Shown piece by piece: positions 650-62,245 of a DNA stretch of 64,000 nucleotides; position 1 is the stretch's first letter, and every line of letters begins with the position of its first letter. The stretch is taken from positions 226,888-290,887 of IMG/VR virus record IMGVR_UViG_3300042540_001399, one strand, 5' to 3'. Under the pieces are notes generated by a model, which did no database searches, had not been told where the DNA came from, and was given only the letters and a program-made list of their open reading frames with translations. A program made the position numbers and the translations under genes.

Positions 650-671
650 AACTTATTAAAAATTAACCATT

Positions 672-941: not shown

Positions 942-1026
942 AAGATGACAGTTTTTTTATTCATAACATTTTTAACGACACTTTTTTTGTTGAGAAAAAA
1001 AAGAAAGTTTTAAGTAGATAAAAAAA

Positions 1027-1100
1027 GGTCTCTTAGCTCATTAGGTTAGAGCAACTGACTCATAATCAGTAGGTGGTTGGTTCGATCCCAACAGGGACCA
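1027..1100 (+). tRNA. tRNA-Ile2/Met(CAT), most like the lysidine-type Ile2
   Basis: Acceptor GGTCTCT/AGGGACC, anticodon arm CTGA-CTCATAA-TCAG, overall resemblance to bacterial ileX-type tRNAs. Confidence 0.9.
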
Positions 1101-1145
1101 CAAAAGTATTGAATATTTTAAAACAGAAATTATTATTTATAATAT

Positions 1146-1219
1146 GCACCCGTAGCTCAGCTGGATAGAGCAACTGCCTTCTAAGCAGTAGGTCAATGGT
1201 TCGAATCCATTCGGGTGTA
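1146..1219 (+). tRNA. tRNA-Arg(TCT)
   Basis: Acceptor GCACCCG/CGGGTGT, anticodon arm ACTGC-CTTCTAA-GCAGT, T loop TTCGAAT. Confidence 0.95.
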
Positions 1220-1260
1220 CTTTTTTTTTATTTTTTTTTTGGAAATCAAAAAGTTTCCTG

Positions 1261-17429: not shown

Positions 17430-17457
17430 AAAAGGAGGACTTTTAATCCTCCTTTTT
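17428..17457. terminator. Bidirectional terminator
   Basis: AAAAAAGGAGGA-CTTTTAA-TCCTCCTTTTT between convergent peptidase and clpC genes. Confidence 0.75.
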
Positions 17458-27304: not shown

Positions 27305-27361
27305 TTATATTATAACTAACAATAAACTTTATATTAAAAAAATATAAGTTAAATTTTGAAT

Positions 27362-43647: not shown

Positions 43648-44397
43648 CTATTTTAACATATCATTAATTATTTCTTGATAAATTTTCTTGTATCTCTTCA
43701 AAGAATTTCTAATTTCTTTTGTAGAAAGATTAGTCATTTCTCGTATTTCAAACAAAACAACATTTTTATTAAACTTGTTGTTGTTCGAATTATCAACAAA
43801 TATATTATTATAGTTACGGAATATTTCCATAAGAGCTTGACCTAGCTTCATTTCTTGTTCACTAATTGATTTATCGTCCATAGAATCTGTAAGTTTAATA
43901 ATAAATTTATTTATTATTTCTTCAGTAGATATACTATCATCGTCTATATGATAAATCATATCAGGGGCATTATGTAAATCCGCAGAAATATCTTCATATG
44001 AAACTTTACGATTCATATCTTTTTGATCTTTCAGTATTTGGCCCATTAAATAATTTTTACATATAGTACCAAAATATGAATATGCCTTTTTTTCTTTTGA
44101 TGGTTTAAATTTATCAATTTTTGTCATCAAAAAAGAATGAGTGTCAACATGGATTTCATTAAAATCCATATCTTTTCTGTATAATTTATATCGTCTTATA
44201 ATTGACGATATCATTTTATCCAAGGGAAATCTTAAATATTCATTATAAATTTTATTCTTTTCATCCATAGTGTTCGCAGTTAAAAACATCCTAACTGCGT
44301 TTTCTTCTGGTTCATCAAAATAATTATTTAACTTAGGTTTCCTTCCCTTCTTTTTCTTTTCATTCTGGGTTTCGTTTAAATCTAATTTTAATTCCAT
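43648..44397 (-). CDS. Putative late-transcription sigma factor (gp55-like)
   Basis: KFKPSKEKKAYSYFGTICKNYL resembles the region-2 motif (FDPEK..PFAYFTQI) of T4-like late sigma factors; C-terminal helix-turn-helix-like segment. Confidence 0.6.
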   Translation of the reverse strand: MELKLDLNETQNEKKKKGRKPKLNNYFDEPEENAVRMFLTANTMDEKNKIYNEYLRFPLDKMISSIIRRYKLYRKDMDFNEIHVDTHSFLMTKIDKFKPSKEKKAYSYFGTICKNYLMGQILKDQKDMNRKVSYEDISADLHNAPDMIYHIDDDSISTEEIINKFIIKLTDSMDDKSISEQEMKLGQALMEIFRNYNNIFVDNSNNNKFNKNVVLFEIREMTNLSTKEIRNSLKRYKKIYQEIINDMLK

Positions 44398-45203
44398 TAA
44401 ACCTCTTGGGGTTCATATTTTATATCTCTTTGTTTAATATAGAAATATTCTTTCTTTGCTGAATCTATCCAAAACTTAACTTCATCTTCACTAAGTCTAT
44501 CATCAGAATTTTTATAATTCCAAAAAATTGAACCTTCTCTCAAATTCATATGTTTATAACCAATTTTTGGAATTGTCATAATCTTAACTGAATTTTGTGT
44601 TAGTCTTAAAAAGAACTCATATCCAAATGTCAATTTGATATTATTTTTAATCATACCATTGTTAATATAATCATCTTTTTTTATTATCAGTCCTGATATT
44701 TGAAAGTTTTGATAGTTCAAAAGAGTTTCATTTGTTAACAACCCTAAGTCTTGTGATATGTTTGCGGCAAACGTTGCTTCATTTGTAAAACCAACAAAGA
44801 CACCTTGTTCATTTACGTCGACAACAATCGGTAAAAATACACCAACATCTTCATATAAATTCATATATTTGGTTGCGTTTTTAAACCAAATGCTCGAATA
44901 CTCGTCATCGAATTCCAACAAAGAAATCCATTTTGAATTTGATGATGTTGCACCATAATTAATTTGGTCCGCAAAATTGGGTTCTTTATCCCAAACTAAC
45001 TTAGTTACATTTAGTTCTTCAAAATCATAGTTTTCAATATGTTCTGACAAGAATTTTTCATCACAGTAAACTATGATTAGTTCATTTATGTAATCTTTTT
45101 GATTTTTTACTGATGTAATACATCTATTGAAGTACTCTTCAAAATTTCTTGCTTTACCTGATTTTATAGGTAATATAACCGATATTGTATTATTATTTTC
45201 CAT
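44397..45203 (-). CDS. GT-A (GT2-like) glycosyltransferase
   Basis: ISVILPI, FADQINYGA, WISLLEFDDEY DxD-type motif. Confidence 0.8.
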   Translation of the reverse strand: MENNNTISVILPIKSGKARNFEEYFNRCITSVKNQKDYINELIIVYCDEKFLSEHIENYDFEELNVTKLVWDKEPNFADQINYGATSSNSKWISLLEFDDEYSSIWFKNATKYMNLYEDVGVFLPIVVDVNEQGVFVGFTNEATFAANISQDLGLLTNETLLNYQNFQISGLIIKKDDYINNGMIKNNIKLTFGYEFFLRLTQNSVKIMTIPKIGYKHMNLREGSIFWNYKNSDDRLSEDEVKFWIDSAKKEYFYIKQRDIKYEPQEV

Positions 45204-46524: not shown

Positions 46525-47201
46525 TATGTATTTATTTTATTTATTACATCTTCAAATTCAGAAAGTGATCTTATAGTGAAGTTGCAATCTATATGTTTAT
46601 TATATTCAGTTTCAAACTTAACTAAAGTTTTATCTTCATACTTAGTCAATAATAATGCAGGGTTTGATGTAAGTAAAACATCTATTTCATCAAACATTTT
46701 ATTTTTTGTGACTTCACTATAAAACAAAACCTTTTCGATAAGACAACCAAATTTTGATAAGAAAAAAAGTGATGATGGTTTTGATTTACCAATTTCATCA
46801 GAAACAATAATCAAATCGTGATTTTCTCTAATTTTATAATATAAATCATTTAAAATATTGAAGGTGTTAATTTCTGTTGATGGCGCATGTCCAAAAAGTT
46901 CCATAGTGTAGTCTTCATACATAAAAGAATAAAGTTCATCTTTTGATCTGAAAGCAAAATGATTCATTAAATTTAATGATGTTACTTCATTTTTTATTTC
47001 ATAATTAAAAAATGTTTTATCTTCGATGATTGACAATTCTGTAGATCCAGAATTTTCAGGATCAAATTCCAAATCAAAAGATTGTAGTGTTTCATCATGA
47101 TCAACATCTACTAAATGTTTTTCATAAAGTTGTTTGAACTTACCTATTGTGTCCCTTAGAACACCATTAATTTCAATCCCTATTCTCTTTGTCATATTCA
47201 T
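46524..47201 (-). CDS. HAD-like 5'(3')-nucleotidase (NT5C-like) with degenerate motif I
   Basis: RIGIEINGVLRD in place of IGIDxDGVLxD; C-terminal F...YN pattern. Confidence 0.55.
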   Translation of the reverse strand: MNMTKRIGIEINGVLRDTIGKFKQLYEKHLVDVDHDETLQSFDLEFDPENSGSTELSIIEDKTFFNYEIKNEVTSLNLMNHFAFRSKDELYSFMYEDYTMELFGHAPSTEINTFNILNDLYYKIRENHDLIIVSDEIGKSKPSSLFFLSKFGCLIEKVLFYSEVTKNKMFDEIDVLLTSNPALLLTKYEDKTLVKFETEYNKHIDCNFTIRSLSEFEDVINKINT

Positions 47202-47910
47202 TTAGTATTTTACCAATTAATGGGTTTCTAACATTTTTAGCATTTCTAAAATCATATACACCAATATCATCCACATTTTGAAATCTTTGAAGTGCGTCAT
47301 AAAGTCCTGATTGTTTTTTATCTTTGTATCTATCTGTTTGTTCTAAGTCACCTGATATAAAAAATTTACTATTGAAACCAATTCTAGTTAACAATAATTT
47401 CATTTGATTTGGTGTTGAATTTTGAGCTTCCTCAAAAATTAATATAGAATTGTCAATATTCATACCTCTCATGTATGCCAAGGCAAATACTTCGATAATT
47501 TCAGATTCTTTAAGTTTTTCTCTTGCTTCTTTACCAATTATTTTATTTAAAAGATAGTATGATGGAAAAATATACGGATCTAGTTTTTCTTCTAAATTAC
47601 CTGGTAATGAACCAAGTTTTTCTTCAGCTTCGACGGCAGGTCTCACAATAATTATTTTTTCGTAGGCGTTGTTTGGGTCCATAAGAAGATCGACAGCCGC
47701 CTTCATAGATATATAACTTTTACCTACGCCCGCCGGTCCTGAACAAATTGTGATTTGATTTTCTTTTAGTATGTTATAATATTCTTCCTGATTTGGTGAT
47801 AAAAATTTATTTTTTTGTTTTTTCTTAATAACTGTATTAATAAATTCTTTTTTTGAAAATGATTTGATTTCTGTTTCCTCGTTTTGATTTACCTTTTTTC
47901 TATTCGTCAT
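47173..47910 (-). CDS. phoH: PhoH-family ATPase
   Basis: GPAGVGKS, IIIVRPAVEAEEKLGSLPG, AYMRGMN, EEAQN, GDLEQTD. Confidence 0.93.
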   Translation of the reverse strand: MTNRKKVNQNEETEIKSFSKKEFINTVIKKKQKNKFLSPNQEEYYNILKENQITICSGPAGVGKSYISMKAAVDLLMDPNNAYEKIIIVRPAVEAEEKLGSLPGNLEEKLDPYIFPSYYLLNKIIGKEAREKLKESEIIEVFALAYMRGMNIDNSILIFEEAQNSTPNQMKLLLTRIGFNSKFFISGDLEQTDRYKDKKQSGLYDALQRFQNVDDIGVYDFRNAKNVRNPLIGKILNEYDKENRD

Positions 47911-48494
47911 TTCAACGTAGTTGATAGTTTATTGTAGTAGCTTATTGGTTGATTCCAAATGGCGCATTTCATACCGTAATAATTATATACAGATTCCCAA
48001 AAAAGAAAATCCTTAGAATTTACACCTTCTTTGTGTTCAGATGGCCACTTACAACTTTCTAAACATTTGAAGTTACAAAGAACATTACCCGTGTCAATTC
48101 TACCAAAGGCTGGTTTACTTGATATCAATCTCAAATTATTGTCAAATGATAATTGTTGTCCAACTAACATACCTCTAAAATTATGTTCTATACACTCTAA
48201 ATATTTAAAATACATATTTTCATGAAAAATAGTGTCGTCATCTAAAAAACAAAAATACCCATTTTTTATATTTTGAAAAACCGCATTTCTTTTTTTATAT
48301 ATTTCACTATCTTCACAATCTACACTATAAACTTTTACATTATTACTTTTTAAAAATTCTAAATCGGGTAATGGTCTTTTTTTTGTGTGTGATATGTGCC
48401 AAATAATATCTTCATTGGCCAAAATAGAGTTATATATGTTTGTTAAGTTTTCATATCTAAATAAAGGAGTTATAATGTGTAAGTTATTTTTCAT
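47907..48494 (-). CDS. GT-A glycosyltransferase
   Basis: HIITP, YFCFLDDD motif, GRIDTG; start set at ATG 48494. Confidence 0.75.
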   Translation of the reverse strand: MKNNLHIITPLFRYENLTNIYNSILANEDIIWHISHTKKRPLPDLEFLKSNNVKVYSVDCEDSEIYKKRNAVFQNIKNGYFCFLDDDTIFHENMYFKYLECIEHNFRGMLVGQQLSFDNNLRLISSKPAFGRIDTGNVLCNFKCLESCKWPSEHKEGVNSKDFLFWESVYNYYGMKCAIWNQPISYYNKLSTTLK

Positions 48495-49122
48495 TTTTTC
48501 TAACAATTTTACATGGGTTACCATAAGCAACAACATCGTCAGGAATATCTTTAGTTACTAAAGATCCGGCACCTATTATTACGTTTTTACCTATTTTTAC
48601 GTTATCAATTATATTTGATCCCATACCTACTGTTGTTTTTTCACCAATTTCTACAAATCCAGCTATATTTACGCCAGGATTTATAGTAACAAAATTATTT
48701 ATTATTGTGTGATGACCAATAGAAGAATTTCTATTAATTGAAACAAAATCACCGATGGTTGTGTGTCCGGCAACTGAAACAGATGAGTTTATTAAACATC
48801 CAAAACCTAATGTTGATGTTTTGGATATTTGCGCTGACTTATGAATTATTTTTATAAATTTATTTTTATCAAGATTAAATAAATTGAAAACTGAAAATTT
48901 ATTTTCTGATTTGTTGACACCTAAAAAGAAATAATCTGAATCCTGAAAATTTTCCGTGAAATCGATCAAAAAATTTTCATTTTCAATTGGGTGGACTATT
49001 GGTAATTTTAGATTATTATATATTTCAATTTTTGGGAAAATTTCATTTGATTCCAAATTGTCTGTGATCATTGTAATCACAGGGTCACTTTTACCTATAA
49101 CTATTAATTTTTTTATTTCCAA
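48484..49122 (-). CDS. Sugar acetyltransferase, NeuD/PglD hexapeptide family
   Basis: IIHKSAQIS, hexapeptide repeats, SIGHH, GAGSLVTKDIP..YGNPCK. Confidence 0.9.
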   Translation of the reverse strand: MEIKKLIVIGKSDPVITMITDNLESNEIFPKIEIYNNLKLPIVHPIENENFLIDFTENFQDSDYFFLGVNKSENKFSVFNLFNLDKNKFIKIIHKSAQISKTSTLGFGCLINSSVSVAGHTTIGDFVSINRNSSIGHHTIINNFVTINPGVNIAGFVEIGEKTTVGMGSNIIDNVKIGKNVIIGAGSLVTKDIPDDVVAYGNPCKIVRKNEK

Positions 49123-49921
49123 AACCCAAGTTTTTAAATTCGATCGGGGACATGATGTCCATTCCCATATTTTCTATAATACTATGTGTTCTTTTTAATA
49201 AATCAATATTTTTTGCTTTTTGTTTGTCTTTAAGATATAAATTATCTTCTAACCCAACTCTCAGACCATCGGCATAAATTAAACCTAAAATATTTGAGTT
49301 AAGTTGGTGTTTACCTATACCACCGAAACAAACTTTGGAATTTTCTGGTAAATTATTCACTATTGACGATACCGTTGATATGTCTAGCTGAGCATTAAAG
49401 ATATTGCTAAAAATAACATTTATGTAATTTGGTCCTGTTAATATTTTTTTTCCCATAAGATATTTGGTATAATTTAACATGCCGGAATCAAAGCATTCAA
49501 TTTCTGGTACTACACCAAAATCATTCATTTTTTCAATTAGTTTCAAAATCATTTCAGGTTCGTTGACTGAAGATCCTTGAGGAAAATTCAATGATGACAT
49601 TGTTAGTGATCCCATGTCGGGCATTAATTCCAATACTTCAGATCTTTTTTCAAACTCGGGATATAATCTGCCGGTTAACGAAACACAAATTGTTAAATCA
49701 GAACAATTTTTTCTAATTCCATCAATTATCTGTCCATAAATTTCTGACTTATATGTGTTAGAAAAATTTTTAGGATCTCTAGCATGAATGTGCACCATAG
49801 TTATACCCAAGTCATATGCTTCGTGAACCTCTTCTATAATTTCATTTGGGTGTAAAGGAGCTAAAGAATTTTCTCTTGTTGTCTGTGTTCCTGTAGGCGT
49901 AAAATTTATTATTTTTTTCAT
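49091..49921 (-). CDS. Beta-keto acid cleavage enzyme (BKACE/Kce, DUF849)
   Basis: IINFTPTG, MVHIHARD, PDMGSL, PEIECFDSG, RVGLEDN. Confidence 0.88.
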   Translation of the reverse strand: MKKIINFTPTGTQTTRENSLAPLHPNEIIEEVHEAYDLGITMVHIHARDPKNFSNTYKSEIYGQIIDGIRKNCSDLTICVSLTGRLYPEFEKRSEVLELMPDMGSLTMSSLNFPQGSSVNEPEMILKLIEKMNDFGVVPEIECFDSGMLNYTKYLMGKKILTGPNYINVIFSNIFNAQLDISTVSSIVNNLPENSKVCFGGIGKHQLNSNILGLIYADGLRVGLEDNLYLKDKQKAKNIDLLKRTHSIIENMGMDIMSPIEFKNLGFGNKKINSYR

Positions 49922-50559
49922 TCTATTATTTTACAATTTTTAAAAACAGAAAATTCTGTAAGATCTCTGTAACCATTATTTTCTCCTAAATCTGAAACGT
50001 GTAGTGGATAATTTTGCATGAGGGATAATCCGTGTGATGCTTGTTGGGGAGTCATATACATATTCCATCCCAACATATCGATATCATCTTCATGATATAA
50101 TTTTTCACTCCTACCTTCATATCTTGCCTTTTTAAACCATTTAACCGCATCTAAATTGTCCGTAAGTATCATCCCACCCTTACTTATTTTTAGATGTTTT
50201 TTAATGTGAAATGATAAACACATAAAGGAACCTGATATATACATGTTTGAAGTGAATCTTTTTGCAGAATCGTAAATTGGGTATGGCTTAAGTTGATAGA
50301 TTCCTTTCCAATTGTTTGTTTCATTTCTTTTATCAAAAATGACTTCACCGCCGGCATGTATGATTGATTGGGGTACGGAAAGATAAGTTTTTGATGGAAT
50401 GGTTACTTGGTTAACTTTTAAATACTTACACACTAAAAACAATGCATTTGTACAATTGTCTACGGAAACCGCATACGGCGCACCGGTATAATCAGCAACT
50501 TCATCTTCGAAAAGTTGTACCACTTTGAATGGGTTATTTTTAGGTCTTCTGTATTCCAT
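49918..50559 (-). CDS. Short DegT/DnrJ/EryC1/StrS-family PLP aminotransferase
   Basis: FEDEVADYTGAPYAVSVDNCTNAL, IYDSA, SFHIKKHL..GGMILTD with the PLP lysine; only 213 aa. Confidence 0.8.
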   Translation of the reverse strand: MEYRRPKNNPFKVVQLFEDEVADYTGAPYAVSVDNCTNALFLVCKYLKVNQVTIPSKTYLSVPQSIIHAGGEVIFDKRNETNNWKGIYQLKPYPIYDSAKRFTSNMYISGSFMCLSFHIKKHLKISKGGMILTDNLDAVKWFKKARYEGRSEKLYHEDDIDMLGWNMYMTPQQASHGLSLMQNYPLHVSDLGENNGYRDLTEFSVFKNCKIIE

Positions 50560-50953
50560 ATTCTAAATAAAATAAATTATTATCATTACTAACAACATTG
50601 AACCCTGTTTTAATAAACAGGTTCAAACTAGCTGTATTTGTTTTTAAAATTTTTGCCTTTGCGTCTGGAAAAATTTTAACAACCTCACTGAGCATAAATT
50701 TACCAACACCAAGTTTTTTAAAACTATTGTCGACACATATTCTTATGTCATTTTCTACCACACCGATGTAACCGCAAGGTATTTCATCCTTAAGACAAAC
50801 ATAGTAACAATCACCATATTTATCCATATATAATTTCTGATCATTTTCACTTATATTAACTTTATCCAAAAAACCTTTTTGATTTGTTGGGTCATTCCTT
50901 AAAATTCTTATAAAGTTGTAGTATTTTTCTTCGTTTTTTCTTAGTTCTAACAT
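50540..50953 (-). CDS. GNAT-family N-acetyltransferase
   Basis: CVDNSFKKLGVGKFML acetyl-CoA motif A; NTASLNLFIKTGF motif B. Confidence 0.8.
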   Translation of the reverse strand: MLELRKNEEKYYNFIRILRNDPTNQKGFLDKVNISENDQKLYMDKYGDCYYVCLKDEIPCGYIGVVENDIRICVDNSFKKLGVGKFMLSEVVKIFPDAKAKILKTNTASLNLFIKTGFNVVSNDNNLFYLEYGIQKT

Positions 50954-50957
50954 ATAT

Positions 50958-51740
50958 CTATTTGGCCCAAAATTTTAAATTTAACCATTCATTACCTGTA
51001 AATATTTTTTTTGTCTTGTCAGAAATGTCAGTCATAATTTTCCCAATATTATTTTTTTCTATTTCTATTTTGTTAATGATATCATTTATATTTTTGTAAC
51101 TAACAAAATTAGGCAGACCTTCATGACCGATTCCTATGGTTTTACGACCCATATGACCTAACTCAAACATAGTTGTACAACCACCTTTTTCGTTTGTTTT
51201 TAAATAAACAAAACTTTTTTCATAGAAATTTTCTTTCAAAAAATCTATAGTTTTATATTTTGAATAAATTACATTTTCTTCACCAAAATGTTTTATGATA
51301 GGTTTAATTATTGTGTCCCAATTAAAATAATCAGGTTTGTTTCCATGTATTCCATAGTACACATATATTTTTTCACCAAGAGGTGTTGGTTTAAACATAG
51401 AATAATCTTTGAAAGGAATATATATTTGTTTGTGTTTTAAATTATGTTTTGTTAAAATGTTCGAAAAATATCCTGGGTAGGCGTAAGTAAAAGTTCTACC
51501 ATCATTTATTAATTTAGCAACCAAATTCAGGTGACTAGACACCATATCTGCACCACCCCAAATTACAATTCTATAAGATTTATGATTTACAAATTTTTTT
51601 ATATCTTCACCATTGTAAAGCCCAACAAAAACACAAGGTAAATTTTCATCATAAGAATTTTTTAAATTCCATTTTTTTCTAAAACCATCGCCAAAATATT
51701 TTTCTAAAACTGACGAAACGTGTACTTGATTAAAATCCAT
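50958..51740 (-). CDS. Probable GT-B-like glycosyltransferase
   Basis: GGCTTMFELGHMGRKTI segment resembles the GT-B donor-binding site; lies in the GT island. Confidence 0.5.
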   Translation of the reverse strand: MDFNQVHVSSVLEKYFGDGFRKKWNLKNSYDENLPCVFVGLYNGEDIKKFVNHKSYRIVIWGGADMVSSHLNLVAKLINDGRTFTYAYPGYFSNILTKHNLKHKQIYIPFKDYSMFKPTPLGEKIYVYYGIHGNKPDYFNWDTIIKPIIKHFGEENVIYSKYKTIDFLKENFYEKSFVYLKTNEKGGCTTMFELGHMGRKTIGIGHEGLPNFVSYKNINDIINKIEIEKNNIGKIMTDISDKTKKIFTGNEWLNLKFWAK

Positions 51741-51756: not shown

Positions 51757-52401
51757 TTATATATCTTTTTTCAAACCAAAACCTGCCGATGGTACAAATA
51801 TAATTGGTTCTGCGCTAAAAATATTTTTTGGTATTTGTTTATATAATCTATCAATGACTCTAAAATCACTACATTTCCAACTATCCCATGTTGCAATATT
51901 AATATATTTAGAATGAAATGTAAAACAGGAACCACCTATACCTCCTATTCTTGGTGGTCTCGACGGAGATACATCTAAAGGCAAAAATGATCCGTTTGAA
52001 TAAATCATTCTCCAAATTATCAAAGTATCTTCATCATTATTATTAATTAACTTAACAACATTTTCTAAAGAAAATGAATCCACAAATCTATCATCGTCAT
52101 CAAGGTATATGACCCAACCATCTTTAATGTATTTATGAACTTCATTGAAATAAAGGTTATGTGGTGAATACGGCCCTGTATTTGGGTTTGGATTTTTGTC
52201 ATTACTAATTAAATTTTCTTTGTTCAAAAATAAAAAAGACTTAATTCCCGAATTAATTACATAATCCATACTTTCAACATCGTCAGTACATACTATGTGG
52301 TTTATGTTTTTGTATGTTTGTTGACGAATAGAACTCAAGGTTTTTTGAAAATTGTTGGGCCTGTTTGATGTTCTTGTAATTATATTTATTAATGGTTCCA
52401 T
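51757..52401 (-). CDS. GT-A glycosyltransferase
   Basis: INIITRT, WVIYLDDDD, DFRVI. Confidence 0.8.
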   Translation of the reverse strand: MEPLINIITRTSNRPNNFQKTLSSIRQQTYKNINHIVCTDDVESMDYVINSGIKSFLFLNKENLISNDKNPNPNTGPYSPHNLYFNEVHKYIKDGWVIYLDDDDRFVDSFSLENVVKLINNNDEDTLIIWRMIYSNGSFLPLDVSPSRPPRIGGIGGSCFTFHSKYINIATWDSWKCSDFRVIDRLYKQIPKNIFSAEPIIFVPSAGFGLKKDI

Positions 52402-52404: not shown

Positions 52405-53916
52405 CTATATAACTTTAATATGATTTTTTAATTTGCTTATATTTGTTTGTATAAATGGTAACAAATTTTGTAAATAATCGTACTTGTACTTTTCATTTTT
52501 TTCTTTTTCATCATTTCTTGTTTGAGATTCATAATGATACCCAACACAAGAAGAATCGGTATAATTTTTTAATCCTGACAATAAACATTTTATATTTAGT
52601 TCTACATCTTCAAGACAGGAAATATAGTTTTCATTAAAGAGTCCTAATTTGATAAATGTTGATTTTCTTATCATCATAAATCCGCCAGTGTTGCCGAATG
52701 TTTCGTTCAACCCAATTTTATAATTAAAATAATTCCTAAAATTTAAGTGACCAACGTCAATAGATTGTGTATTACTCCTGAAAACTACCGCAACACCATC
52801 ATGTTGAATAGTATTATCCCTGAAGTGTAACCTGATCCCAACAGTACCTGCGTTATTTTTTTTAGAAAAAACTTCTAACATACCACTAACTGCATCGTTT
52901 AACAATTTTATATCGTTGTTACAAAAAAGTAAAAATTCATATTTTTCACTTATGTGATTTTTTACTACATCATTATTGATTTTAGAAAAATTATAATAGT
53001 CATATTCTATTAGTGTAACGTTACCAAGAGAAAGTATATTTTTTTTTATAAAATTTTTTTCATTATCTGATGATCCTGTATCTGCAATAAAAACATCGAA
53101 AACACTATTATCACATTTTTCATATAAAGATTTTACACAATCAAACAACAGTTCAGTTTTACCTTTGGTTGGTATTATAACCGCGACTTTTTTTAGTTTT
53201 TTATTTTTTTTAAAGTTTAATTCATTAATAAAAACATTTTGGGGTTTTATATCCAAAGGCAAAACTTTTTTCCATTTATTTAAGAATTTTTCTTTGCTTT
53301 CCCAAAATTCTTGGTTTGGTTGACCTACCGATTCGTGCGTTATTTCAAACGATGATGTTACCCCGATTTTAACCCCATCAACATAATTGGGAACAGAAAA
53401 ACCATGATCATAAAAGTGAAATTTACCAAATGATTCGTCAAACTTATGTTTAATTTTATTTTTATCAAATGAAATAAATAAACCATCTATTGTGACTACA
53501 GGTATTAATTGAGGTAATTTTGGTGAATATTTACTCAAAAACTTTTTTTGACCAGGTGGAAAATGATACACTTGTCCTACCATTGTTTGATGTAGTTTTT
53601 CCCAATACACACCTGATTCGGGAAAATAACAAGAACCTGCTTTACCTATTATACCAAATTCTGGATTTTTAAAAAAATCATCTAAAAGTTTTTTTCCCCA
53701 ATTTTTTTCTAATTTTATATCATTGTGACAACAAACTACAATATCGTATTTAGATTCGGTAATACCACTATTGTAAACTTGTGACAAAGAAAATTTATTA
53801 TGGTTAATATATTCCAATATTTGAATATCTTCAACACCACAAGTGTTTTTTAAGTGATTTTTAAATTTATTGTTATATTCCACATCTTTATGTGTGGAGT
53901 AAATTACTGTGATCAT
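52405..53916 (-). CDS. Tandem two-domain GT-A glycosyltransferase
   Basis: Domain 1 VVCCHNDI..IDGLF..FHFYDHGF; domain 2 VAVIIPTK..LLFCNNDI..EDVELN. Confidence 0.82.
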   Translation of the reverse strand: MITVIYSTHKDVEYNNKFKNHLKNTCGVEDIQILEYINHNKFSLSQVYNSGITESKYDIVVCCHNDIKLEKNWGKKLLDDFFKNPEFGIIGKAGSCYFPESGVYWEKLHQTMVGQVYHFPPGQKKFLSKYSPKLPQLIPVVTIDGLFISFDKNKIKHKFDESFGKFHFYDHGFSVPNYVDGVKIGVTSSFEITHESVGQPNQEFWESKEKFLNKWKKVLPLDIKPQNVFINELNFKKNKKLKKVAVIIPTKGKTELLFDCVKSLYEKCDNSVFDVFIADTGSSDNEKNFIKKNILSLGNVTLIEYDYYNFSKINNDVVKNHISEKYEFLLFCNNDIKLLNDAVSGMLEVFSKKNNAGTVGIRLHFRDNTIQHDGVAVVFRSNTQSIDVGHLNFRNYFNYKIGLNETFGNTGGFMMIRKSTFIKLGLFNENYISCLEDVELNIKCLLSGLKNYTDSSCVGYHYESQTRNDEKEKNEKYKYDYLQNLLPFIQTNISKLKNHIKVI

Positions 53917-53922: not shown

Positions 53923-54528
53923 TCAGATTAATCCTGTGCTACCAAACCCGTTATTTTTCCTATCTTTGTTTTCAACATCAGAAACTTTTACAATATCAAT
54001 CCACTTACCACAAACAACTGGACATAACACGGCTTGTGCCACCTTCATCCCTTTTGTAATCCTGAATTCTTCGTTATTGGTGTTAAATAAAATAACTTTG
54101 ATTTCACCTGTATACCCTTGATCAACAGTTCCTGGTGAATTAAGTACAAACAAACCTTGATTGATTGCTAATCCACTTTTAGATCTTATTTGAATTTCAT
54201 GATTTTCGGGAACGTCAATAATAATACCTGTGGATATCAAAGATCTTCCCAAAGGTGGTATTGTATATTCATCTACGGAATACAAATCAAACCCTGAATC
54301 TGTATTATATGCAAACTTAGGTAACACCGCACTTTCATGTGATAGTTTGATTTTCATTTGGACTTTCGGAATGTCGTCAGTAAATACTTTTTCCAATTCA
54401 TTAAGATCTATACCATATTCATTCATAAGATTGTTTAATTCAACATCTTCATTAATTTCATTATCACCAAAAAGTCTTTCTAAATCTTTTGTTTGTGATA
54501 GTATTTTATTCAAATCTCCTTTATTCAT
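53923..54528 (-). CDS. dut: Trimeric dUTPase with N-terminal extension
   Basis: SGFDL, RSKSGLA, GTVDQGYTGEI, VAQAV, RKNNGFGSTG. Confidence 0.95.
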   Translation of the reverse strand: MNKGDLNKILSQTKDLERLFGDNEINEDVELNNLMNEYGIDLNELEKVFTDDIPKVQMKIKLSHESAVLPKFAYNTDSGFDLYSVDEYTIPPLGRSLISTGIIIDVPENHEIQIRSKSGLAINQGLFVLNSPGTVDQGYTGEIKVILFNTNNEEFRITKGMKVAQAVLCPVVCGKWIDIVKVSDVENKDRKNNGFGSTGLI

Positions 54529-55259
54529 TATTTTAAAATTTTTAATTTCATTATTGCTTCGACTAATACATCAACATCTTTTTCACAATAATCTGATATT
54601 TCTTTTAGTTTTTGTTCTTCCCAATAAGCGTTGTGTACTTTATCACCCGTAACTTCACCATCTTTAGGTGTTGGTATGTCTAAACAAGAACACAACAAAT
54701 CTAATGATCCTATTGAACTGTAAGCCCCGTACTGCCAAATTTCTTTAGTATCAATAGCCTTAATTTCCCAAGGTTTAGTATCATATGAAGGTAAGATTTT
54801 AGATGGCATTATACCATTTATAATCATTCTTTTTGCTAACATCGGTATGTCAAAGTTTTTAAGATTGTGCCCACAAAGATAAAAATCTAACTTATGACAA
54901 CGATCTAAAAGATTTCTAACTTCTAACAAAAGTTTTTGTTCGTCGTCACCAGAAAAGGTTTGTTTTTTTGTTTCACCATTTTCTAAAACAAACGCCATAG
55001 AAACACAAACTACTTTAGCAAACTCAGGAACTAAAGCGGCTCTTTTTTTGAATACAAAATTCATTTTTTCTTCACGTTCTTTTTTTGTCTTTGGGACTTC
55101 GATGTGATCTTCGGGAAATCTTTTTTGAAACCAATCGTAGTATTTAACAAATTGATCCGCAATCTTTGGACTAAATTTTTGACAAGAATCAAAGTCTGGA
55201 CACCCACCGACAGTTTCTATATCTAAAAATAATATTTTTGTAATTGGTATATTAATCAT
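54528..55259 (-). CDS. DEDD 3'-5' exonuclease (PolB-exonuclease-like)
   Basis: FLDIET, GHNLKNFDIP, YCEKDV. Confidence 0.88.
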   Translation of the reverse strand: MINIPITKILFLDIETVGGCPDFDSCQKFSPKIADQFVKYYDWFQKRFPEDHIEVPKTKKEREEKMNFVFKKRAALVPEFAKVVCVSMAFVLENGETKKQTFSGDDEQKLLLEVRNLLDRCHKLDFYLCGHNLKNFDIPMLAKRMIINGIMPSKILPSYDTKPWEIKAIDTKEIWQYGAYSSIGSLDLLCSCLDIPTPKDGEVTGDKVHNAYWEEQKLKEISDYCEKDVDVLVEAIMKLKILK

Positions 55260-55266: not shown

Positions 55267-56481
55267 TTATTTAATTAAAGATTTGTAAAATTCTGATCTT
55301 GTTTTTGTTACGTTATTTAAATCATATTTATCCTTGACTGTTTCATATAATCTTTCACCTAAGTCTATAATCATATTTGGGTTATCCACTAATTTTTTTA
55401 TGTATTTTGCCCAATCACTGTGATTCTTATGTTCATCAACCAATAAAGCATTTCCATCAACAAATTCACCTTTGTTTAATGCATGTTTTAAGTCAATTGT
55501 GTAGGGACCAACATTTGAAGCTATTATCGCTTTTTTATAAAAACCCGCCTCAATAACTTTCAATTGGGATTTCATTCTATTGAAGACGTGATTTTTTATT
55601 GGAGCTAAAGAAATGTCAAACTTAGAATAGTTTTTTGCATAAGATGTGACAGGTCTAGTCCATACTCTTACGTAGTTTTCTTTTTCCAAACCAAAAAATT
55701 CTTGATCATCAAACTTGTTCAAAAATTCTTTGTACTTAGGTGACACAATTTTATAATTGTTAGTGAAAATTTCTTCATATCTTACCCAAACTGTTTCTTC
55801 TGGTTTTATTGGTCTTTGTACTTTTTCGCCAGTTTGTTTATTAATTTCTGTTACGACACCTCTTGTATCAAAACCACAAAGATGATATTGAATTTTTTCT
55901 TGTATTGGTGATAATTTACTTACCATACCATCAAGTAGTTTAATATCGTGTAAATGTGATGATCCCCCTAACCACCCTACTCGAACTTTATCTGAAGGTA
56001 AAGTTTTTTCATTATATTGTGGATCTTGTGGATCAATTGCGTTTGGAAGTACTATTACGTTTTTATTAAACTTTTTAATTTCATTTGCAAATATTTCAGT
56101 AGTTGTTGTAACAAAAGAACACGCCTTTAAGTTTTTAAGAATTCTTTCATTTATTTTGTTTGTAACAATTAAATGATAAATAGGATGTTCTTTTGTTGGT
56201 AACCAATAATCATCTATGTCACCAATAACAACAACACCTTGTTGTTTCAAAGTGTTAATTAACTCAACAGACTTTTCATAATCTTGCCCAATACATCTAT
56301 GAAAATGTACAATTTGATATTTTTTAAAATAGTTTAAATCATTCACATTTGGTTGATAATCAATATCAACATGAAATTCATCGGGATACATGTTTTGTAA
56401 TTTAACATGCGGATCTACCGATCTATACTTACCCACACCTGACTGATCCGAAGGTAACACTAATACATTAATTTTTTCCAT
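55267..56481 (-). CDS. GT-B (GT4-like) glycosyltransferase
   Basis: VLPNAID, VGWLGGSSHLHD, FNRMKSQLKVIEAG, IIASNVGPY. Confidence 0.85.
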   Translation of the reverse strand: MEKINVLVLPSDQSGVGKYRSVDPHVKLQNMYPDEFHVDIDYQPNVNDLNYFKKYQIVHFHRCIGQDYEKSVELINTLKQQGVVVIGDIDDYWLPTKEHPIYHLIVTNKINERILKNLKACSFVTTTTEIFANEIKKFNKNVIVLPNAIDPQDPQYNEKTLPSDKVRVGWLGGSSHLHDIKLLDGMVSKLSPIQEKIQYHLCGFDTRGVVTEINKQTGEKVQRPIKPEETVWVRYEEIFTNNYKIVSPKYKEFLNKFDDQEFFGLEKENYVRVWTRPVTSYAKNYSKFDISLAPIKNHVFNRMKSQLKVIEAGFYKKAIIASNVGPYTIDLKHALNKGEFVDGNALLVDEHKNHSDWAKYIKKLVDNPNMIIDLGERLYETVKDKYDLNNVTKTRSEFYKSLIK

Positions 56482-56526: not shown

Positions 56527-56556
56527 AAAAAACCCCAACCTAAAAAGATCGGGGTT
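56527..56556 (-). terminator. Rho-independent terminator (minus strand)
   Basis: AACCCCGATC.....GGTTGGGGTT hairpin with T tract on the minus strand. Confidence 0.6.
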
Positions 56557-57190: not shown

Positions 57191-57574
57191 TTAATCAAAA
57201 ATTGCGTTAATTATAACTCTTGACATACTTTTATCACCATTTGGGTTGTAGTTTGGTCTTGGTTCGTTAAATTTTTCCATTGTTGGTTTAAGTGCTATTA
57301 TTTTATCAACTCTAAACAAACGCCAACTTGGAAGTGGTTTTTTTCCCTTATAAGATCTATGAGAAGCACCTTCCATGTCCCAAGCCCTTAAAACGGGATT
57401 ATTTGCCTTACTATAACCAAAACAAACCGGCTCTATAATTCTTAAACCTTTACCGCCTGGTTCATCACCATCGTAATAAACTATCACTCGACGTTTTTTT
57501 TTAATTGCATCGACGATAGTTGATATTGATGCTACCTCAACGATAATATCTTTAAAAGAATTGTAAAGTTTCAT
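57191..57574 (-). CDS. Stand-alone WYL-like domain protein
   Basis: VYYDG....LRIIEPVCFG....VLRAW....WRLFRVDKIIAL matches the WYL pattern. Confidence 0.7.
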   Translation of the reverse strand: MKLYNSFKDIIVEVASISTIVDAIKKKRRVIVYYDGDEPGGKGLRIIEPVCFGYSKANNPVLRAWDMEGASHRSYKGKKPLPSWRLFRVDKIIALKPTMEKFNEPRPNYNPNGDKSMSRVIINAIFD

Positions 57575-59368: not shown

Positions 59369-62245
59369 ATGGCAGAGCAAAATATTAATCAATATGTGTT
59401 TCAAAAGTACAAAATCAATACTGTTTATGATTCTATGGACATGTCATTGGCTTCAGATGAAAGAAACTATAATGAAGAAGTAATATTTTCACCATACCTA
59501 ATTGCTGAAACTTATGGTAATAAATTACCAATAAACATAGATATCAATAACCCTTTAACATCTCAATGGCTCACATTAACTTATAAAAATTTTAATCCTA
59601 ACAACGTTTTTGTTTCACAAAACTATTACAATCCAGAAAATAAAGATTTAGGGTGTTTTTCATCAAGCACATTGTGTGATGTGGGTCTTACAGGTATTGA
59701 TAATGGTCTTGTTAATAAAATGACAGGTGAAACCTTAAATTATACGGAAGGCTTATATGACGACTATTTAAAATTTAATAGGTTGTATTTCGATAGAAGA
59801 ATGAAAATGTTTCAAGTAACAGGATACACAGAATCATATAATCGATTTTCAGGCATACCAAAAAATACACTCTATGAGATTGTAAGCAAAGAAAACATAC
59901 AATATGGTAAATATCACGAATTGTATGGTGGATTTTATCAAGGATTTTATAAGTTATTTGGATTTGATTATGAAGTTTTACCCGAAAGAATGTCTAAAGG
60001 TTGGTCGGTTGAAATGTTATTGAAACCTAGATTTGTTAATGAATATAACCCACTACCCTCAGAAACAACTTTAAATCAAATTTACCCACAAAATAAAAAC
60101 ACATTTTTTTATTTTGGTACAAGGGCTGAAAACAAGTTTTATCACCACGCGGATGGACACCCAAGTTGTTTGACTGGTTATACAAGAGTTACAGAAAAAC
60201 TTAGTGGTTGTCCATCGACATGTTCTTGTTGTGATAAAACAATAACAAACAGTCGATGTATATATGTTTATCCACCAAGGTCTTTGAATGATAAGCACGA
60301 CCCACATATAAATTACGGTTGTGACAAATGTAAAGGTGACAGAAAAATATCCGTAAGTTGTGGTTGTGGTTGTGAAGAAAAACCGTGTCAAATATGTGGT
60401 TGGGAATGTCAAACACACAAATGTGAAACAGTAATTTTACCAACACCAACTCCGACACCAACCCCAACACCTACTCCTGTATGTGAAATACCAACACCAA
60501 TATGTACACCAAGTTGTACAAAATGTGATAGTTGTGATGAATGTACAACATGTGAAACAACGGGTTTTACATCTATTGAGTACACTTGTGAAACAGATCC
60601 ACTTTTTGATGTTATGTCAAATAACATAGCTTTCAAATTGTGTGGCGATGTAAAAAACCCACAGATAGGGGTAAAAGTTTTAAGATTTACGGGTGGTTGT
60701 GAAACAACAGGAACATGTGTTACAGGTCAAACTTATATGACTGGTTATACAATAGAAGAATTTTGTACGCCACCTATATACCCATATTGTGAAATTGTAA
60801 ATCCTGATTTTCTTAATTATGAGCATTGGTTTTTAGTAAATGTAGTATGGGAAAGATATTCTTGGTATGACTTTTGCGATCTCAAATTTTTTGGTGGTTT
60901 AGGGGATATTACAAAATTTGAATATTTGGAATCTTTGGCTAATAATGCGGTTGAACTTATTCGTCCGCCATTGACTCATAATGATAAAAATGGTGACACT
61001 ATAGAATTAGTTAATTTGAACAAGACTTGGTTGGATGATAAAAAATATAGACTTGGTAGACTAAAAATTTATGTTAACGGAAAAAAAATATATACAAAAG
61101 AAAACTTTGAAGAAGTAATACCAAGAGGATTATTTACGGACAAAGAAAAACAAATAGGAGTTCCATTCAACATTTCATGGGGTGGTGGTACTCAGGGATT
61201 ACATGAAAACTTAACGTTTTCATCTTGTTCGGCACTTACTTCAAATTATATTCAGGATCCGGAGTGTCTTCCTAATAATATTTTGAGTGGTACATCATTA
61301 TCATCTTTAACCACTAACATTCTATTGGAACAAAACTTTGGTGGGACATTTGAAGGTGCCATATCACAATTTAGAATGTATATTGAACCATTGACTTCAG
61401 ATGAAGTAAAACACAATTTTAATTTACTAAAGTATAAATTTAATCTTTTTGATCCGAATTGCCCTGATTGTGATACAACAAAATGTTTACCTAATGACTT
61501 AACTTATAACATAAATGACAACATACTTACCACTACAACAACTTTTATTCCTAACCCAACGACAATACCTTTTAAGCTAGGTAGGTATTACAAAATGGAT
61601 GGTCGTGACTTGAACTTTTTAATTAAAAATAATTTATCAAAAATAACATCTTTGATTGGGATTAAAACAAATCAAAATTTAAATAGCAAATATTGGGACG
61701 ACAATGGTTGGTGGGGGAATCAAGGGAACACACCTCAATGTGTTGGTTACTCTTGGGCTCATTGGTTAGAAGATGGACCTGTAAGTCAGTCAGGAATACC
61801 ACCAATTATAAAACCAAATGATATTTATATTAACGCACAAAAATTGGATCAATGGGTTGGTGAAAACTATGATGGTACATCAGTTAGGGGTGGGGTAAAA
61901 TATTTAAAAAAAATTGGTAAAGTACAATCTTATTTTTGGGCGTTTGACCTAAACACTTTGATTGACACAGTTTTTAAATATGGACCTGTTGTCGTAGGTA
62001 CTAATTGGTATTCTAACATGTTTTACCCAACTAAAACTGGTATGATTAAAGTTGGTGGTAAACTAGTTGGTGGTCATGCTTACGTTGTTAATGGTGTTGA
62101 TAAAAAAAATAAAACTTTTAGGATAAAAAATAGTTGGGGTAAGTCTTGGGGTAAAAATGGTAGTGCAACAATATCATTTGCCGATATGTCAAGACTAATA
62201 AAAGAAAACGGAGAAATTTGTTTGGCTATAGAAATAGGTAGTTAA
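59369..62245 (+). CDS. Large virion protein: LamG/ConA-like elements, Cys-rich/Pro-Thr linker, C-terminal papain-like (C1) protease
   Basis: LKIYVNG and GAISQFRMYIEPLTSDEV (LamG-like); NQGNTPQCVGYSWAH, GGHAY and KNSWGKSWG give the Q-C-H-N papain catalytic set. Confidence 0.82.
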   Translation: MAEQNINQYVFQKYKINTVYDSMDMSLASDERNYNEEVIFSPYLIAETYGNKLPINIDINNPLTSQWLTLTYKNFNPNNVFVSQNYYNPENKDLGCFSSSTLCDVGLTGIDNGLVNKMTGETLNYTEGLYDDYLKFNRLYFDRRMKMFQVTGYTESYNRFSGIPKNTLYEIVSKENIQYGKYHELYGGFYQGFYKLFGFDYEVLPERMSKGWSVEMLLKPRFVNEYNPLPSETTLNQIYPQNKNTFFYFGTRAENKFYHHADGHPSCLTGYTRVTEKLSGCPSTCSCCDKTITNSRCIYVYPPRSLNDKHDPHINYGCDKCKGDRKISVSCGCGCEEKPCQICGWECQTHKCETVILPTPTPTPTPTPTPVCEIPTPICTPSCTKCDSCDECTTCETTGFTSIEYTCETDPLFDVMSNNIAFKLCGDVKNPQIGVKVLRFTGGCETTGTCVTGQTYMTGYTIEEFCTPPIYPYCEIVNPDFLNYEHWFLVNVVWERYSWYDFCDLKFFGGLGDITKFEYLESLANNAVELIRPPLTHNDKNGDTIELVNLNKTWLDDKKYRLGRLKIYVNGKKIYTKENFEEVIPRGLFTDKEKQIGVPFNISWGGGTQGLHENLTFSSCSALTSNYIQDPECLPNNILSGTSLSSLTTNILLEQNFGGTFEGAISQFRMYIEPLTSDEVKHNFNLLKYKFNLFDPNCPDCDTTKCLPNDLTYNINDNILTTTTTFIPNPTTIPFKLGRYYKMDGRDLNFLIKNNLSKITSLIGIKTNQNLNSKYWDDNGWWGNQGNTPQCVGYSWAHWLEDGPVSQSGIPPIIKPNDIYINAQKLDQWVGENYDGTSVRGGVKYLKKIGKVQSYFWAFDLNTLIDTVFKYGPVVVGTNWYSNMFYPTKTGMIKVGGKLVGGHAYVVNGVDKKNKTFRIKNSWGKSWGKNGSATISFADMSRLIKENGEICLAIEIGS

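What the first reader, a model, noticed from the sequence alone, without database searches (positions are those of the whole stretch)
48484..50953. BKACE embedded in an aminotransferase/acyltransferase cassette
Seen: GNAT, DegT, BKACE and NeuD-like genes with overlapping ends. Established: BKACE enzymes convert a beta-keto acid plus acetyl-CoA into an acyl-CoA plus acetoacetate. Inference: BKACE supplies an unusual acyl-CoA to N- or O-acylate the amino sugar, giving a non-acetyl sugar decoration. I know of no phage precedent.
Basis: partly seen in the sequence, partly recalled or inferred. Interest (0 to 1): 0.6.

Follow-up and report, generated by a model that had tools for sequence, protein, structure and literature searches.

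The report
Phage amino-sugar acylation cassette with BKACE
A 291-kb phage carries a tightly packed gene set for making an acylated amino sugar, in which a beta-keto-acid cleavage enzyme is coupled to a sugar N-acyltransferase; this pairing recurs in dozens of uncultured phages and in Bacteroidota but I found no paper that describes it.

Summary
On the minus strand lie a GNAT (50540-50953), a DegT-like protein (49918-50559), a BKACE (49091-49921) and a PerB/PglD-type hexapeptide acyltransferase, here called LbH (48484-49122). Their ends overlap, and they sit in a glycosyltransferase-rich operon of a jumbo phage.

- **The "DegT" is a 213-aa short form.** It keeps the PLP lysine and aspartate but lacks the C-terminal domain. 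It belongs to a very large, mostly viral family.
- **The cassette joins two modules.**
  - GNAT+short DegT occurs in 49 of the 80 closest short-DegT viral loci, and fused forms exist.
  - BKACE+LbH occurs in 56 of 57 BKACE-bearing viral loci and in 53 of the 80 nearest bacterial loci.
- **The BKACE looks active.** It keeps the zinc triad and the catalytic Glu, but has Phe where Kce has Tyr145. It is below every curated equivalog cut-off, so its substrate is unknown.

It does not prove it.

"No phage precedent" holds for 50,697 GenBank phage records and for PHROGs. It does not hold for uncultured viral contigs.

Verdict: a new variant of a known kind, of moderate to high interest.

The parts
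49091..49921 (-). BKACE (DUF849) enzyme, 276 aa. The zinc ligands H44/H46/E225, the base E142, and D226, R221 and S81 are invariant in the clade. F144 stands at the Kce Tyr145 position.
   Evidence: Pfam PF05853, E 5.3e-61. Aligned to Kce 2Y7D and to 3NO5. Conservation in 26 sequences. Below all NCBIfam equivalog cut-offs.
48484..49122 (-). PerB/PglD/VioB-type left-handed beta-helix (LbH) sugar N-acyltransferase, 212 aa, TTG start. It overlaps the BKACE by 32 nt. The catalytic His is H137.
   Evidence: PF00132. TIGR03570 at 151.8 bits, cut-off 160.8. The best solved match is perosamine N-acetyltransferase PerB 4EA7, whose H141 aligns with the invariant H137.
49918..50559 (-). Short DegT-like PLP protein, 213 aa. 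It keeps K121 (SFHxxK motif), D97 and Y59. It lacks the C-terminal domain and about 30 internal residues.
   Evidence: PF01041, E 4.6e-20. Alignment A1. AF2 pLDDT 88.9. Foldseek top hit is GDP-perosamine synthase. hhalign to a full-length DegT covers its residues 27-249 only.
50540..50953 (-). Small GNAT acyltransferase, 137 aa, partner of the short DegT.
   Evidence: PF00583. Lies directly upstream of the short DegT in 49 of 80 viral loci. Is 49% identical to the GNAT half of a 350-aa GNAT-short-DegT fusion.
47907..48536 (-). Small GT-A-like putative glycosyltransferase, 209 aa, with a DDD motif and no predicted transmembrane helix. It often follows the cassette.
   Evidence: Weak PF00535 match, E 7e-4. 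Present in 28 of 57 BKACE viral loci. Relatives (39-42% identical) follow the cassette in three bacterial loci, among them the Aquirufa and 'Chitinophaga' loci, which also carry the short DegT. Hydropathy scan.
50958..51740 (-). Compact GT-B-fold putative glycosyltransferase, 260 aa, with no Pfam match.
   Evidence: AF2 pLDDT 92. Foldseek hits are GT-B glycosyltransferases, E about 1e-5, TM 0.5-0.6. Co-occurs with the short DegT in 16 of 80 loci.
51757..52401 (-). GT2 glycosyltransferase, 214 aa.
   Evidence: PF00535, E 1.9e-7.
52405..53916 (-). Two-domain GT2 glycosyltransferase, 503 aa.
   Evidence: PF13712, E 3e-22, and PF00535, E 1e-12.
55267..56481 (-). GT-B (GT1/4-like) glycosyltransferase, 404 aa, probably the first gene of the operon.
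   Evidence: Weak PF13692 match. Lies just downstream of the terminator at 56531-56556.
56531..56556 (-). Intrinsic-terminator-like hairpin (11 pairs plus a T run) upstream of the operon. No further minus-strand terminator is found down to 43000.
44397..45203 (-). GT2 glycosyltransferase, 268 aa, further down the same gene run.
   Evidence: PF00535, E 4.9e-7.

Best explanation
The region is a phage-borne cassette that makes an N-acylated amino-deoxy sugar nucleotide for the neighbouring soluble glycosyltransferases.

**Proposed route (inferred)**
1. Host dTDP-glucose is converted by the phage's own RmlB-like 4,6-dehydratase, encoded outside the window at genome position 121848-122774.
2. The 213-aa short DegT, a minimal PLP enzyme, aminates the resulting keto sugar.
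3. The PerB/PglD-type LbH transferase acylates the new amine.
4. The translationally coupled BKACE supplies the acyl donor. It converts a beta-keto acid plus acetyl-CoA into acetoacetate plus a non-acetyl acyl-CoA, which the LbH uses.
5. The small GNAT, which travels with the short DegT in other phages, is a second, probably acetyl-CoA-using, acyltransferase of the ancestral GNAT+short-DegT module.

**What is shown:** gene identities, conserved catalytic residues, and conserved gene pairing in phages and bacteria.

**What is inferred:** the direction of the hand-off, the sugar, the acyl group and the acceptor. The acceptor is most likely virion or host surface glycans.
For: **BKACE is intact**
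- Pfam match E 5e-61.
- The zinc triad and the general base are invariant in 26 clade members.

**BKACE and an acyltransferase travel together**
- They are adjacent, with overlapping ends in most viral loci, in 56 of 57 viral loci and adjacent in 53 of the 80 nearest bacterial loci.
- In 8 further bacterial loci a GNAT takes the LbH's place.
- On the BKACE tree the partner label is strongly clustered; none of 500 label shuffles needed as few changes.

**LbH is a sugar N-acyltransferase type**
- It is closest to PerB, PglB, VioB and PglD, and the catalytic His is invariant.

**The short DegT looks like a working PLP enzyme**
- It keeps all PLP-binding hallmarks and folds confidently as the large domain of sugar aminotransferases.
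- In 5 viral loci a full-length DegT takes its place.

**Bacterial relatives sit in amino-sugar contexts**
- They lie with FdtA, DegT, an ArnC-like GT2, an ArnT-like PMT_2, a WecF-like GT56 or an Amj flippase.

**The phage can supply the keto sugar**
- It encodes an RmlB-like dehydratase: TIGR01181 at 304.7 bits, which is below that model's equivalog cut-off of 365.1.

**One operon is likely**
- There is one terminator upstream and none inside the gene run.
Against: - **No assay.** The acyl-CoA hand-off rests on gene neighbourhood alone.
- **Substrate unknown.** The BKACE scores far below every curated equivalog cut-off: Kce 170 against 382, and 3-oxoadipate:acetyl-CoA transferase 150 against 350.
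- **Tyr145 position is Phe.** The same is true of BsfD, which does not make an acyl-CoA (PMC12871164). It is also true of three uncharacterised solved homologues, 3NO5, 3FA5 and 3CHV.
- **No source of the beta-keto acid.** No gene that would make one is evident in the cassette.
- **Unproven aminotransferase.** The short DegT lacks the C-terminal domain that full-length enzymes have, so sugar-nucleotide transamination is not shown.
- **Two acyltransferases, one aminotransferase.** This is unexplained.
- **No nucleotidyltransferase** is encoded in the genome.
Confidence: 0.5

Rival explanations
1. BsfD-like chemistry on a sugar-bound or free malonyl-type group. The LbH would transfer malonyl (or another beta-carboxy acyl) from a common CoA ester to the amino sugar. 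The BKACE homologue would then carry out a decarboxylative Claisen condensation with acetyl-CoA, giving an N-acetoacetyl-type (1,3-dicarbonyl) decoration rather than an acyl-CoA.
For: - The Kce Tyr145 position is an invariant Phe, as in BsfD.
- In BsfD this change is discussed together with acetyl transfer plus decarboxylation instead of retro-Claisen cleavage (PMC12871164).
- This route needs only universal metabolites (malonyl-CoA and acetyl-CoA). That removes the problem of where a phage-infected cell would get a free beta-keto acid (inference).
Against: - Phe at this position also occurs in 3NO5, 3FA5 and 3CHV, so it is not diagnostic.
- The clade lacks BsfD's insertion of about 20 residues after strand beta-3 (alignment).
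- No BKACE is known to act on an amide-linked substrate.
- This is pure inference.
Confidence: 0.15
2. The BKACE+LbH pair and the GNAT+short-DegT pair are two independent modules that merely adjoin here. The LbH would be an ordinary N-acetyltransferase, and the BKACE would do something unrelated to the sugar, for example auxiliary carbon or CoA metabolism.
For: - GNAT+short DegT occurs without BKACE in 47 of the 80 closest short-DegT loci.
- Short DegT+LbH occurs without BKACE in the cultured Flavobacterium phage immuto.
- All characterised BKACEs are catabolic (PMC4922564; NetSyn preprint).
Against: - BKACE and LbH are adjacent, with overlapping ends in most viral loci, in 56 of 57 viral loci and adjacent in 53 of 80 bacterial loci, across several phyla and varying surroundings.
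- Where the LbH is absent, a GNAT or another small protein often takes its place.
- A pure metabolic gene would not track acyltransferases like this.
Confidence: 0.12
3. The cassette modifies something other than a glycan destined for proteins or the envelope. The target could be phage DNA bases or a small-molecule amine.
For: - The operon also holds dUTPase, an exonuclease and PhoH.
- All glycosyltransferases here are soluble.
- T4 beta-glucosyltransferase appears among the weak GT-B fold hits of the 260-aa protein.
Against: - The genome has a bona fide thymidylate synthase, above its equivalog cut-off, and a dUTPase. There is thus no sign of a hydroxymethyl-pyrimidine pathway.
- Bacterial relatives sit in envelope-glycan contexts.
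- The GT-B fold hits are generic.
Confidence: 0.08

Closest known systems
DegT aminotransferase + PglD/PerB/VioB N-acetyltransferase pairs, e.g. Caulobacter GDP-perosamine synthase/PerB and Campylobacter PglE/PglD
   Same: The order of chemistry is the same: aminate an NDP-keto-deoxy sugar, then N-acylate it with an LbH enzyme that uses a catalytic His. These are the best solved matches of both phage proteins.
   Different: - The aminotransferase here is a 213-aa form without the C-terminal domain.
- The transferase is coupled to a BKACE, which none of those pathways has.
- The TIGR03570 score is just under its cut-off.
Flavobacterium phage vB_FspM_immuto glycosylation cluster (NC_055915, gp169-181)
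   Same: This cultured phage has a short DegT (47% identical) directly followed by a PglB-like LbH ('pilin glycosylation protein'), a sugar epimerase and several glycosyltransferases.
   Different: It has no BKACE and no GNAT at that spot, and it also carries a full-length DegT.
Kce, 3-keto-5-aminohexanoate cleavage enzyme (PDB 2Y7D-G), and the BKACE/DUF849 family
   Same: - The match covers the full length (about 30% identity by my reading of the alignment; no tool figure).
- The zinc ligands His-His-Glu, the Glu143 base, and Asp231, Arg226 and Ser82 equivalents are conserved.
   Different: - Tyr145 is replaced by Phe, and Kce Glu14 is replaced by Gln13.
- The score is far below the Kce equivalog cut-off.
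- The context is glycan biosynthesis, not lysine fermentation or another catabolic pathway.
BsfD of the flavophos pathway (PDB 9ZSC; PMC12871164)
   Same: It is a DUF849 member used in biosynthesis, with Phe at the Tyr145 position and the same metal site.
   Different: BsfD has an insertion of about 20 residues carrying Arg91 for a phosphonate substrate, and no acyltransferase partner. Its chemistry ends in a diketone, not an acyl-CoA.
Arn (Ara4N) and ECA Fuc4NAc-type lipid-linked amino-sugar pathways
   Same: Bacterial relatives of the pair sit with DegT, an ArnC-like GT2, an ArnT-like PMT_2, FdtA, a WecF-like GT56 or an Amj flippase. This layout points to lipid-carrier-borne amino-sugar decoration.
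   Different: The phage version has only soluble glycosyltransferases and no flippase or membrane transferase. Those known pathways use formyl or acetyl donors, not a BKACE.

Membership tests
BKACE / DUF849 (PF05853) | Pfam domain above the gathering score over the full length | tested here: met
   206.8 bits against a cut-off of 24.8; profile positions 2-269 of 274.
BKACE / DUF849 (PF05853) | Zinc ligands His46, His48 and Glu230, and the general base Glu143 (Kce numbering) | tested here: met
   H44, H46, E225 and E142 align to them and are invariant in 26 clade members.
BKACE / DUF849 (PF05853) | Tyr145 (Kce) / Tyr173 (PdKce), said to be present in canonical BKACEs (PMC12871164) | tested here: not met
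   F144 is invariant at this position. The same Phe occurs in 3NO5, 3FA5, 3CHV and BsfD.
BKACE / DUF849 (PF05853) | Acetyl-CoA-dependent cleavage of a beta-keto acid to acyl-CoA + acetoacetate | not testable with these tools
   This needs an enzyme assay.
Kce equivalog (NF052387) / 3-oxoadipate:acetyl-CoA transferase (NF053568) | Score at or above the curated equivalog cut-off | tested here: not met
   169.8 against 382, and 149.8 against 350.
DegT/DnrJ/EryC1/StrS sugar aminotransferases (PF01041) | Pfam match above the gathering score | tested here: met
   72.6 bits against 19.8, but as two stretches that cover only part of the profile: positions 25-90 and 163-235, of 360.
DegT/DnrJ/EryC1/StrS sugar aminotransferases (PF01041) | Schiff-base Lys in the SFHxxK motif and the Asp that binds the pyridine nitrogen | tested here: met
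   K121 aligns with Lys186 of perosamine synthase. K121, S116, F117 and D97 are invariant in 32 sequences.
DegT/DnrJ/EryC1/StrS sugar aminotransferases (PF01041) | Two-domain architecture of about 360-400 aa, with a C-terminal small domain | tested here: not met
   The protein has 213 aa. hhalign covers only residues 27-249 of a 367-aa DegT. Foldseek TM normalised to the target is about 0.4.
NeuD/PglB/VioB sugar acetyltransferases (TIGR03570) | Score at or above the subfamily cut-off | tested here: not met
   151.8 against 160.8. The match covers residues 57-205, so the N-terminal 56 residues are unmatched.
NeuD/PglB/VioB sugar acetyltransferases (TIGR03570) | Catalytic His (PerB His141, PglD His125) within the LbH domain | tested here: met
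   H137 aligns with PerB H141 and is invariant in 26 sequences.
GNAT (PF00583) | Pfam match above the gathering score | tested here: met
   25.6 bits against 20.7. There is only a weak PseH resemblance, E 1.3e-3.

The most novel reading that the evidence does not exclude
A distinct BKACE subfamily, shared between Bacteroidota (and other phyla) and their large phages, works in biosynthesis rather than catabolism. It would make, or remodel, the acyl group that a coupled N-acyltransferase puts on an amino sugar. That would be the first role of this enzyme family in glycan decoration. Here it acts together with a minimal, roughly 210-aa, single-domain PLP sugar aminotransferase that is widespread in viruses.
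Probability: 0.45. Interest if true: 0.7.

Novelty: new variant of a known kind. Interest (0 to 1): 0.6.

Why it matters
- **BKACE biology.** In the papers I could search, BKACE enzymes appear almost only in breakdown pathways; the one biosynthetic member is BsfD. A conserved coupling to sugar N-acyltransferases would give the family a role in glycan biosynthesis. It would also explain how some unusual N-acyl sugars obtain their acyl donors.
- **Phage biology.** It would show that large phages carry not only glycosyltransferases but also the means to make a non-standard acyl decoration. This bears on virion glycosylation, host-surface remodelling and receptor masking.
- **Enzymology.** If active, the half-size DegT family would be the smallest known sugar aminotransferase scaffold.

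Tried and rejected
- **DNA search of GenBank phages** with the 6-kb region gave only two short, weak hits.
- **PHROGs** has no family for the BKACE, the GNAT or the small glycosyltransferases.
- **Literature searches** found no description of the pairing. Terms tried were BKACE/DUF849 with phage or bacteriophage, and 3-keto-5-aminohexanoate with viral or polysaccharide terms.
- **BKACE groups G1-G7** of Bastard et al. could not be assigned. The reference set and active-site logos are not available in text. I can say only that the nearest references are Kce and 3NO5, and the nearest curated models are Kce and the 3-oxoadipate enzyme.
- **A pseudogene reading of the short DegT was rejected.** The length is conserved at 196-224 aa across 43 viral loci (33 distinct sequences), and the catalytic residues are invariant.
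- **A DegT split by BKACE insertion was rejected.** No C-terminal DegT fragment exists anywhere in the genome.
- **The ESM Atlas look-up** added nothing beyond "BKACE".
- **The 319-aa protein** that flanks the BKACE in 24 viral loci has no Pfam or NCBIfam match and no homologue in this genome.
- **No complex prediction was run** for BKACE with LbH, because I do not claim that they bind.
Full report
**Setting**

The window is the last 64 kb of a single 290,887-bp contig with 31% G+C and 22 tRNA genes. It holds a large terminase subunit (25347-27119), a portal protein (27356-29182), a major head protein (33577-35466) and a Lon-like protease. IMG/VR classes the record as a virus that is 99% complete. 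It is therefore a jumbo tailed phage.

The finding lies in a long run of minus-strand genes. A strong terminator-like hairpin sits at 56531-56556, and no other minus-strand terminator is found down to 43000. The cassette is thus probably co-transcribed with several other genes:
- a GT-B glycosyltransferase (55267-56481);
- an exonuclease (54528-55259);
- a dUTPase (53923-54528);
- a two-domain GT2 (52405-53916) and a GT2 (51757-52401);
- a 260-aa protein (50958-51740);
- downstream, a small GT-A-like protein (47907-48536), PhoH (47173-47910) and another GT2 (44397-45203).

**Observation**

The family matches are far beyond chance for the BKACE (E 5e-61), the DegT (5e-20) and the hexapeptide transferase (7e-17). 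The GNAT match is modest but above threshold.

The 260-aa neighbour has no Pfam match. It folds confidently (pLDDT 92) as a compact GT-B glycosyltransferase. None of the glycosyltransferases in the run has a predicted membrane helix.

**The "DegT" is a short form**

- It has 213 residues instead of about 370.
- It aligns to residues 27-249 of a full-length DegT. About 30 internal residues and the entire C-terminal domain are missing.
- The PLP hallmarks are kept and are invariant in 32 homologues. These are the Schiff-base lysine K121 in an SFHxxK motif, D97, and Y59 in an invariant T-Y pair that I take, from memory of the family, to be the ring-stacking aromatic.
- The AlphaFold model is confident (pLDDT 88.9). 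Its best structural matches are sugar aminotransferases, led by GDP-perosamine synthase.
- The conserved length (196-224 aa in 43 viral loci) rules out a pseudogene.
- The family is very large: 6,602 proteins in the word search, the best 120 nearly all 211-219 aa, and at least 598 stretches in IMG/VR.
- It also occurs in the cultured Flavobacterium phage immuto, in two "huge phages" and in a Synechococcus phage.

**Two modules**

*GNAT + short DegT.* Around the 80 viral short-DegT genes closest to the window's, the gene directly upstream is a homologue of the window's GNAT in 49 loci. BKACE is present only in the window's own genome. GNAT-short-DegT fusions exist, of 333 and 350 aa. The GNAT half of the longer one is 49% identical to the window's GNAT.

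*BKACE + LbH.* Around 57 viral BKACE genes (54-83% identical, plus three identical copies of this genome), the LbH transferase follows the BKACE in 56. Its start overlaps the BKACE end by about 30 nt in most loci. The remaining locus is cut off by the contig end. Other genes found in these 57 loci:
- a short DegT of one of two subtypes in 43;
- a full-length DegT in 5;
- the small GT-A-like gene in 28;
- the GNAT only in the three copies of this genome.

Further neighbours include WbqC-like proteins, sulfotransferases, methyltransferases and GT2s. All of these are typical of sugar-modification islands.

**Bacterial relatives**

The 80 closest cellular BKACE genes (44-66% identical) are mostly from Bacteroidota. 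Others come from Planctomycetota, Verrucomicrobiota and further phyla.
- 53 have the LbH next door.
- In 8 a 215-aa GNAT takes its place, and in 7 an unknown 215-aa protein does.

Recurrent contexts are:
- DegT, an ArnC-like GT2, FdtA and an ArnT-like PMT_2 in Saprospiraceae;
- a WecF-like GT56 in Bizionia and in Nitrosopumilus and Flavobacteriales MAG loci;
- in the cultured Aquirufa sp. 1-SAACH-A3, a small island of BKACE-LbH-short DegT-GT-Amj flippase set between housekeeping genes.

On a FastTree phylogeny the viral sequences form one well-supported clade. It also holds the Aquirufa sequence and two Bacteroidota MAG sequences. This points to exchange with Bacteroidota and to a likely host phylum.

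**Is the BKACE competent?**

Mapping on Kce (2Y7D) gives H44/H46/E225 for the zinc ligands His46/His48/Glu230 and E142 for the base Glu143. D226, R221 and S81 match Asp231, Arg226 and Ser82. All are invariant in the clade.

One caveat remains. The position of Kce Tyr145 is an invariant Phe. The flavophos paper states that canonical BKACEs carry Tyr there and links Phe in BsfD to different chemistry (PMC12871164). However, three other solved DUF849 proteins (3NO5, 3FA5, 3CHV) also have Phe, so the residue is not diagnostic.

The protein is far below every NCBIfam equivalog cut-off. Its substrate cannot be named.

**The LbH**

Its closest solved relatives are PerB, Neisseria PglB, VioB and PglD. 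PerB's catalytic His141 aligns with the invariant H137.

**Supply of the keto sugar**

Outside the window, the genome encodes an RmlB-like dTDP-glucose 4,6-dehydratase (TIGR01181 at 304.7 bits, below the 365.1 equivalog cut-off). It encodes no nucleotidyltransferase. It has a true thymidylate synthase and a dUTPase, which argues against a hydroxymethyl-pyrimidine DNA modification route.

**Interpretation**

The best-supported reading is an N-acyl amino-sugar nucleotide pathway in which the BKACE provides a non-acetyl acyl-CoA to its coupled LbH transferase.

A BsfD-like alternative is that the BKACE remodels a malonyl-type acyl group by decarboxylative Claisen condensation. It cannot be excluded, and it would remove the need for a free beta-keto acid.

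Several points are open:
- the acceptor (virion proteins, host envelope or something else);
- the acyl group;
- the reason for having two acyltransferases with one aminotransferase.

**Precedent and novelty**

No BKACE homologue occurs in 50,697 GenBank phage records or in PHROGs. No paper in the searchable library links BKACE/DUF849 to phages or to polysaccharide synthesis.

The cassette without the BKACE does have a cultured-phage precedent. With the BKACE it is common in uncultured viral contigs.

I rate it a new variant of a known kind.

Noticed in passing
window 49918-50559; loci L142-L221: The roughly 210-aa single-domain DegT-like family is itself remarkable. It has at least 598 stretches in IMG/VR and 6,602 proteins in the protein search. 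All PLP residues are kept but the C-terminal domain is absent. Two sequence subtypes are visible in the alignment (my reading; not tested).
   Followed up: partly
P0226, P0241 (Logan contig of 11,460 bp, no DNA available): Natural GNAT-short-DegT fusion proteins of 333 and 350 aa. The longer one sits among GT2 genes and a sulfotransferase, with no BKACE among the genes called in the stretch shown.
   Followed up: partly
L063 5962-9643 (Aquirufa sp. 1-SAACH-A3, NZ_JBEWZH010000006.1): A cultured bacterium carries BKACE-LbH-short DegT-GT-Amj (lipid flippase) as a small island between RmlC, an OMP decarboxylase, a glycogen-branching enzyme and AraC regulators. Its BKACE nests inside the phage clade. 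It is a tractable system for genetics.
   Followed up: partly
L068, L069, L071, L075, L082, L084, L089, L092: In Planctomycetota, Verrucomicrobiota and a Cyanobium MAG, the BKACE relative is followed by a 215-aa GNAT. In four of these loci it is preceded by a Mur-ligase-like protein. This is a different, unexplained BKACE+acyltransferase context.
   Followed up: no
L013 2352-3311 and 23 other viral loci: A 316-322-aa protein with no Pfam or NCBIfam match directly flanks the BKACE or short DegT in 24 viral loci. This genome has no homologue.
   Followed up: partly
window 50958-51740: A 260-aa protein without a Pfam match folds as an unusually compact GT-B glycosyltransferase (pLDDT 92). It co-occurs with the short DegT in 16 of 80 viral loci.
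   Followed up: yes
window 206-1220 and upstream (genome 221915-228107): An array of 22 tRNA genes. The last four (Glu, Asp, Met, Arg) lie in the first 1.2 kb of the window.
   Followed up: no
window 63051-63998 and genome start: An open frame at the window end runs off the contig. The last 60 bases, printed, are GGN-ACN-rich triplet repeats that read in one frame as Gly-Thr-X units; I did not check that this is the ORF's frame. The final 100 bases recur at genome position 37. The contig ends may therefore overlap within a repeat (circular permutation or an assembly artefact), although IMG/VR calls the record linear.
   Followed up: partly
window 59369-62245: A 958-aa protein on the plus strand with a C-terminal papain-like (C1) peptidase domain (E 2.4e-6).
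   Followed up: no
window 17443-19503: A Lon-like ATP-dependent protease (phrog_4871, E 2e-236) encoded by the phage.
   Followed up: no
genome G000:C1 147092-148267 and 148547-149665 (outside the window; locus L141): A GlnII-type glutamine synthetase homologue (328 bits, below its equivalog cut-off of 500) lies next to a 372-aa thymidylate synthase that is longer than usual.
   Followed up: partly
window 57191-57574: A small WYL-domain protein just upstream of the operon's terminator.
   Followed up: no
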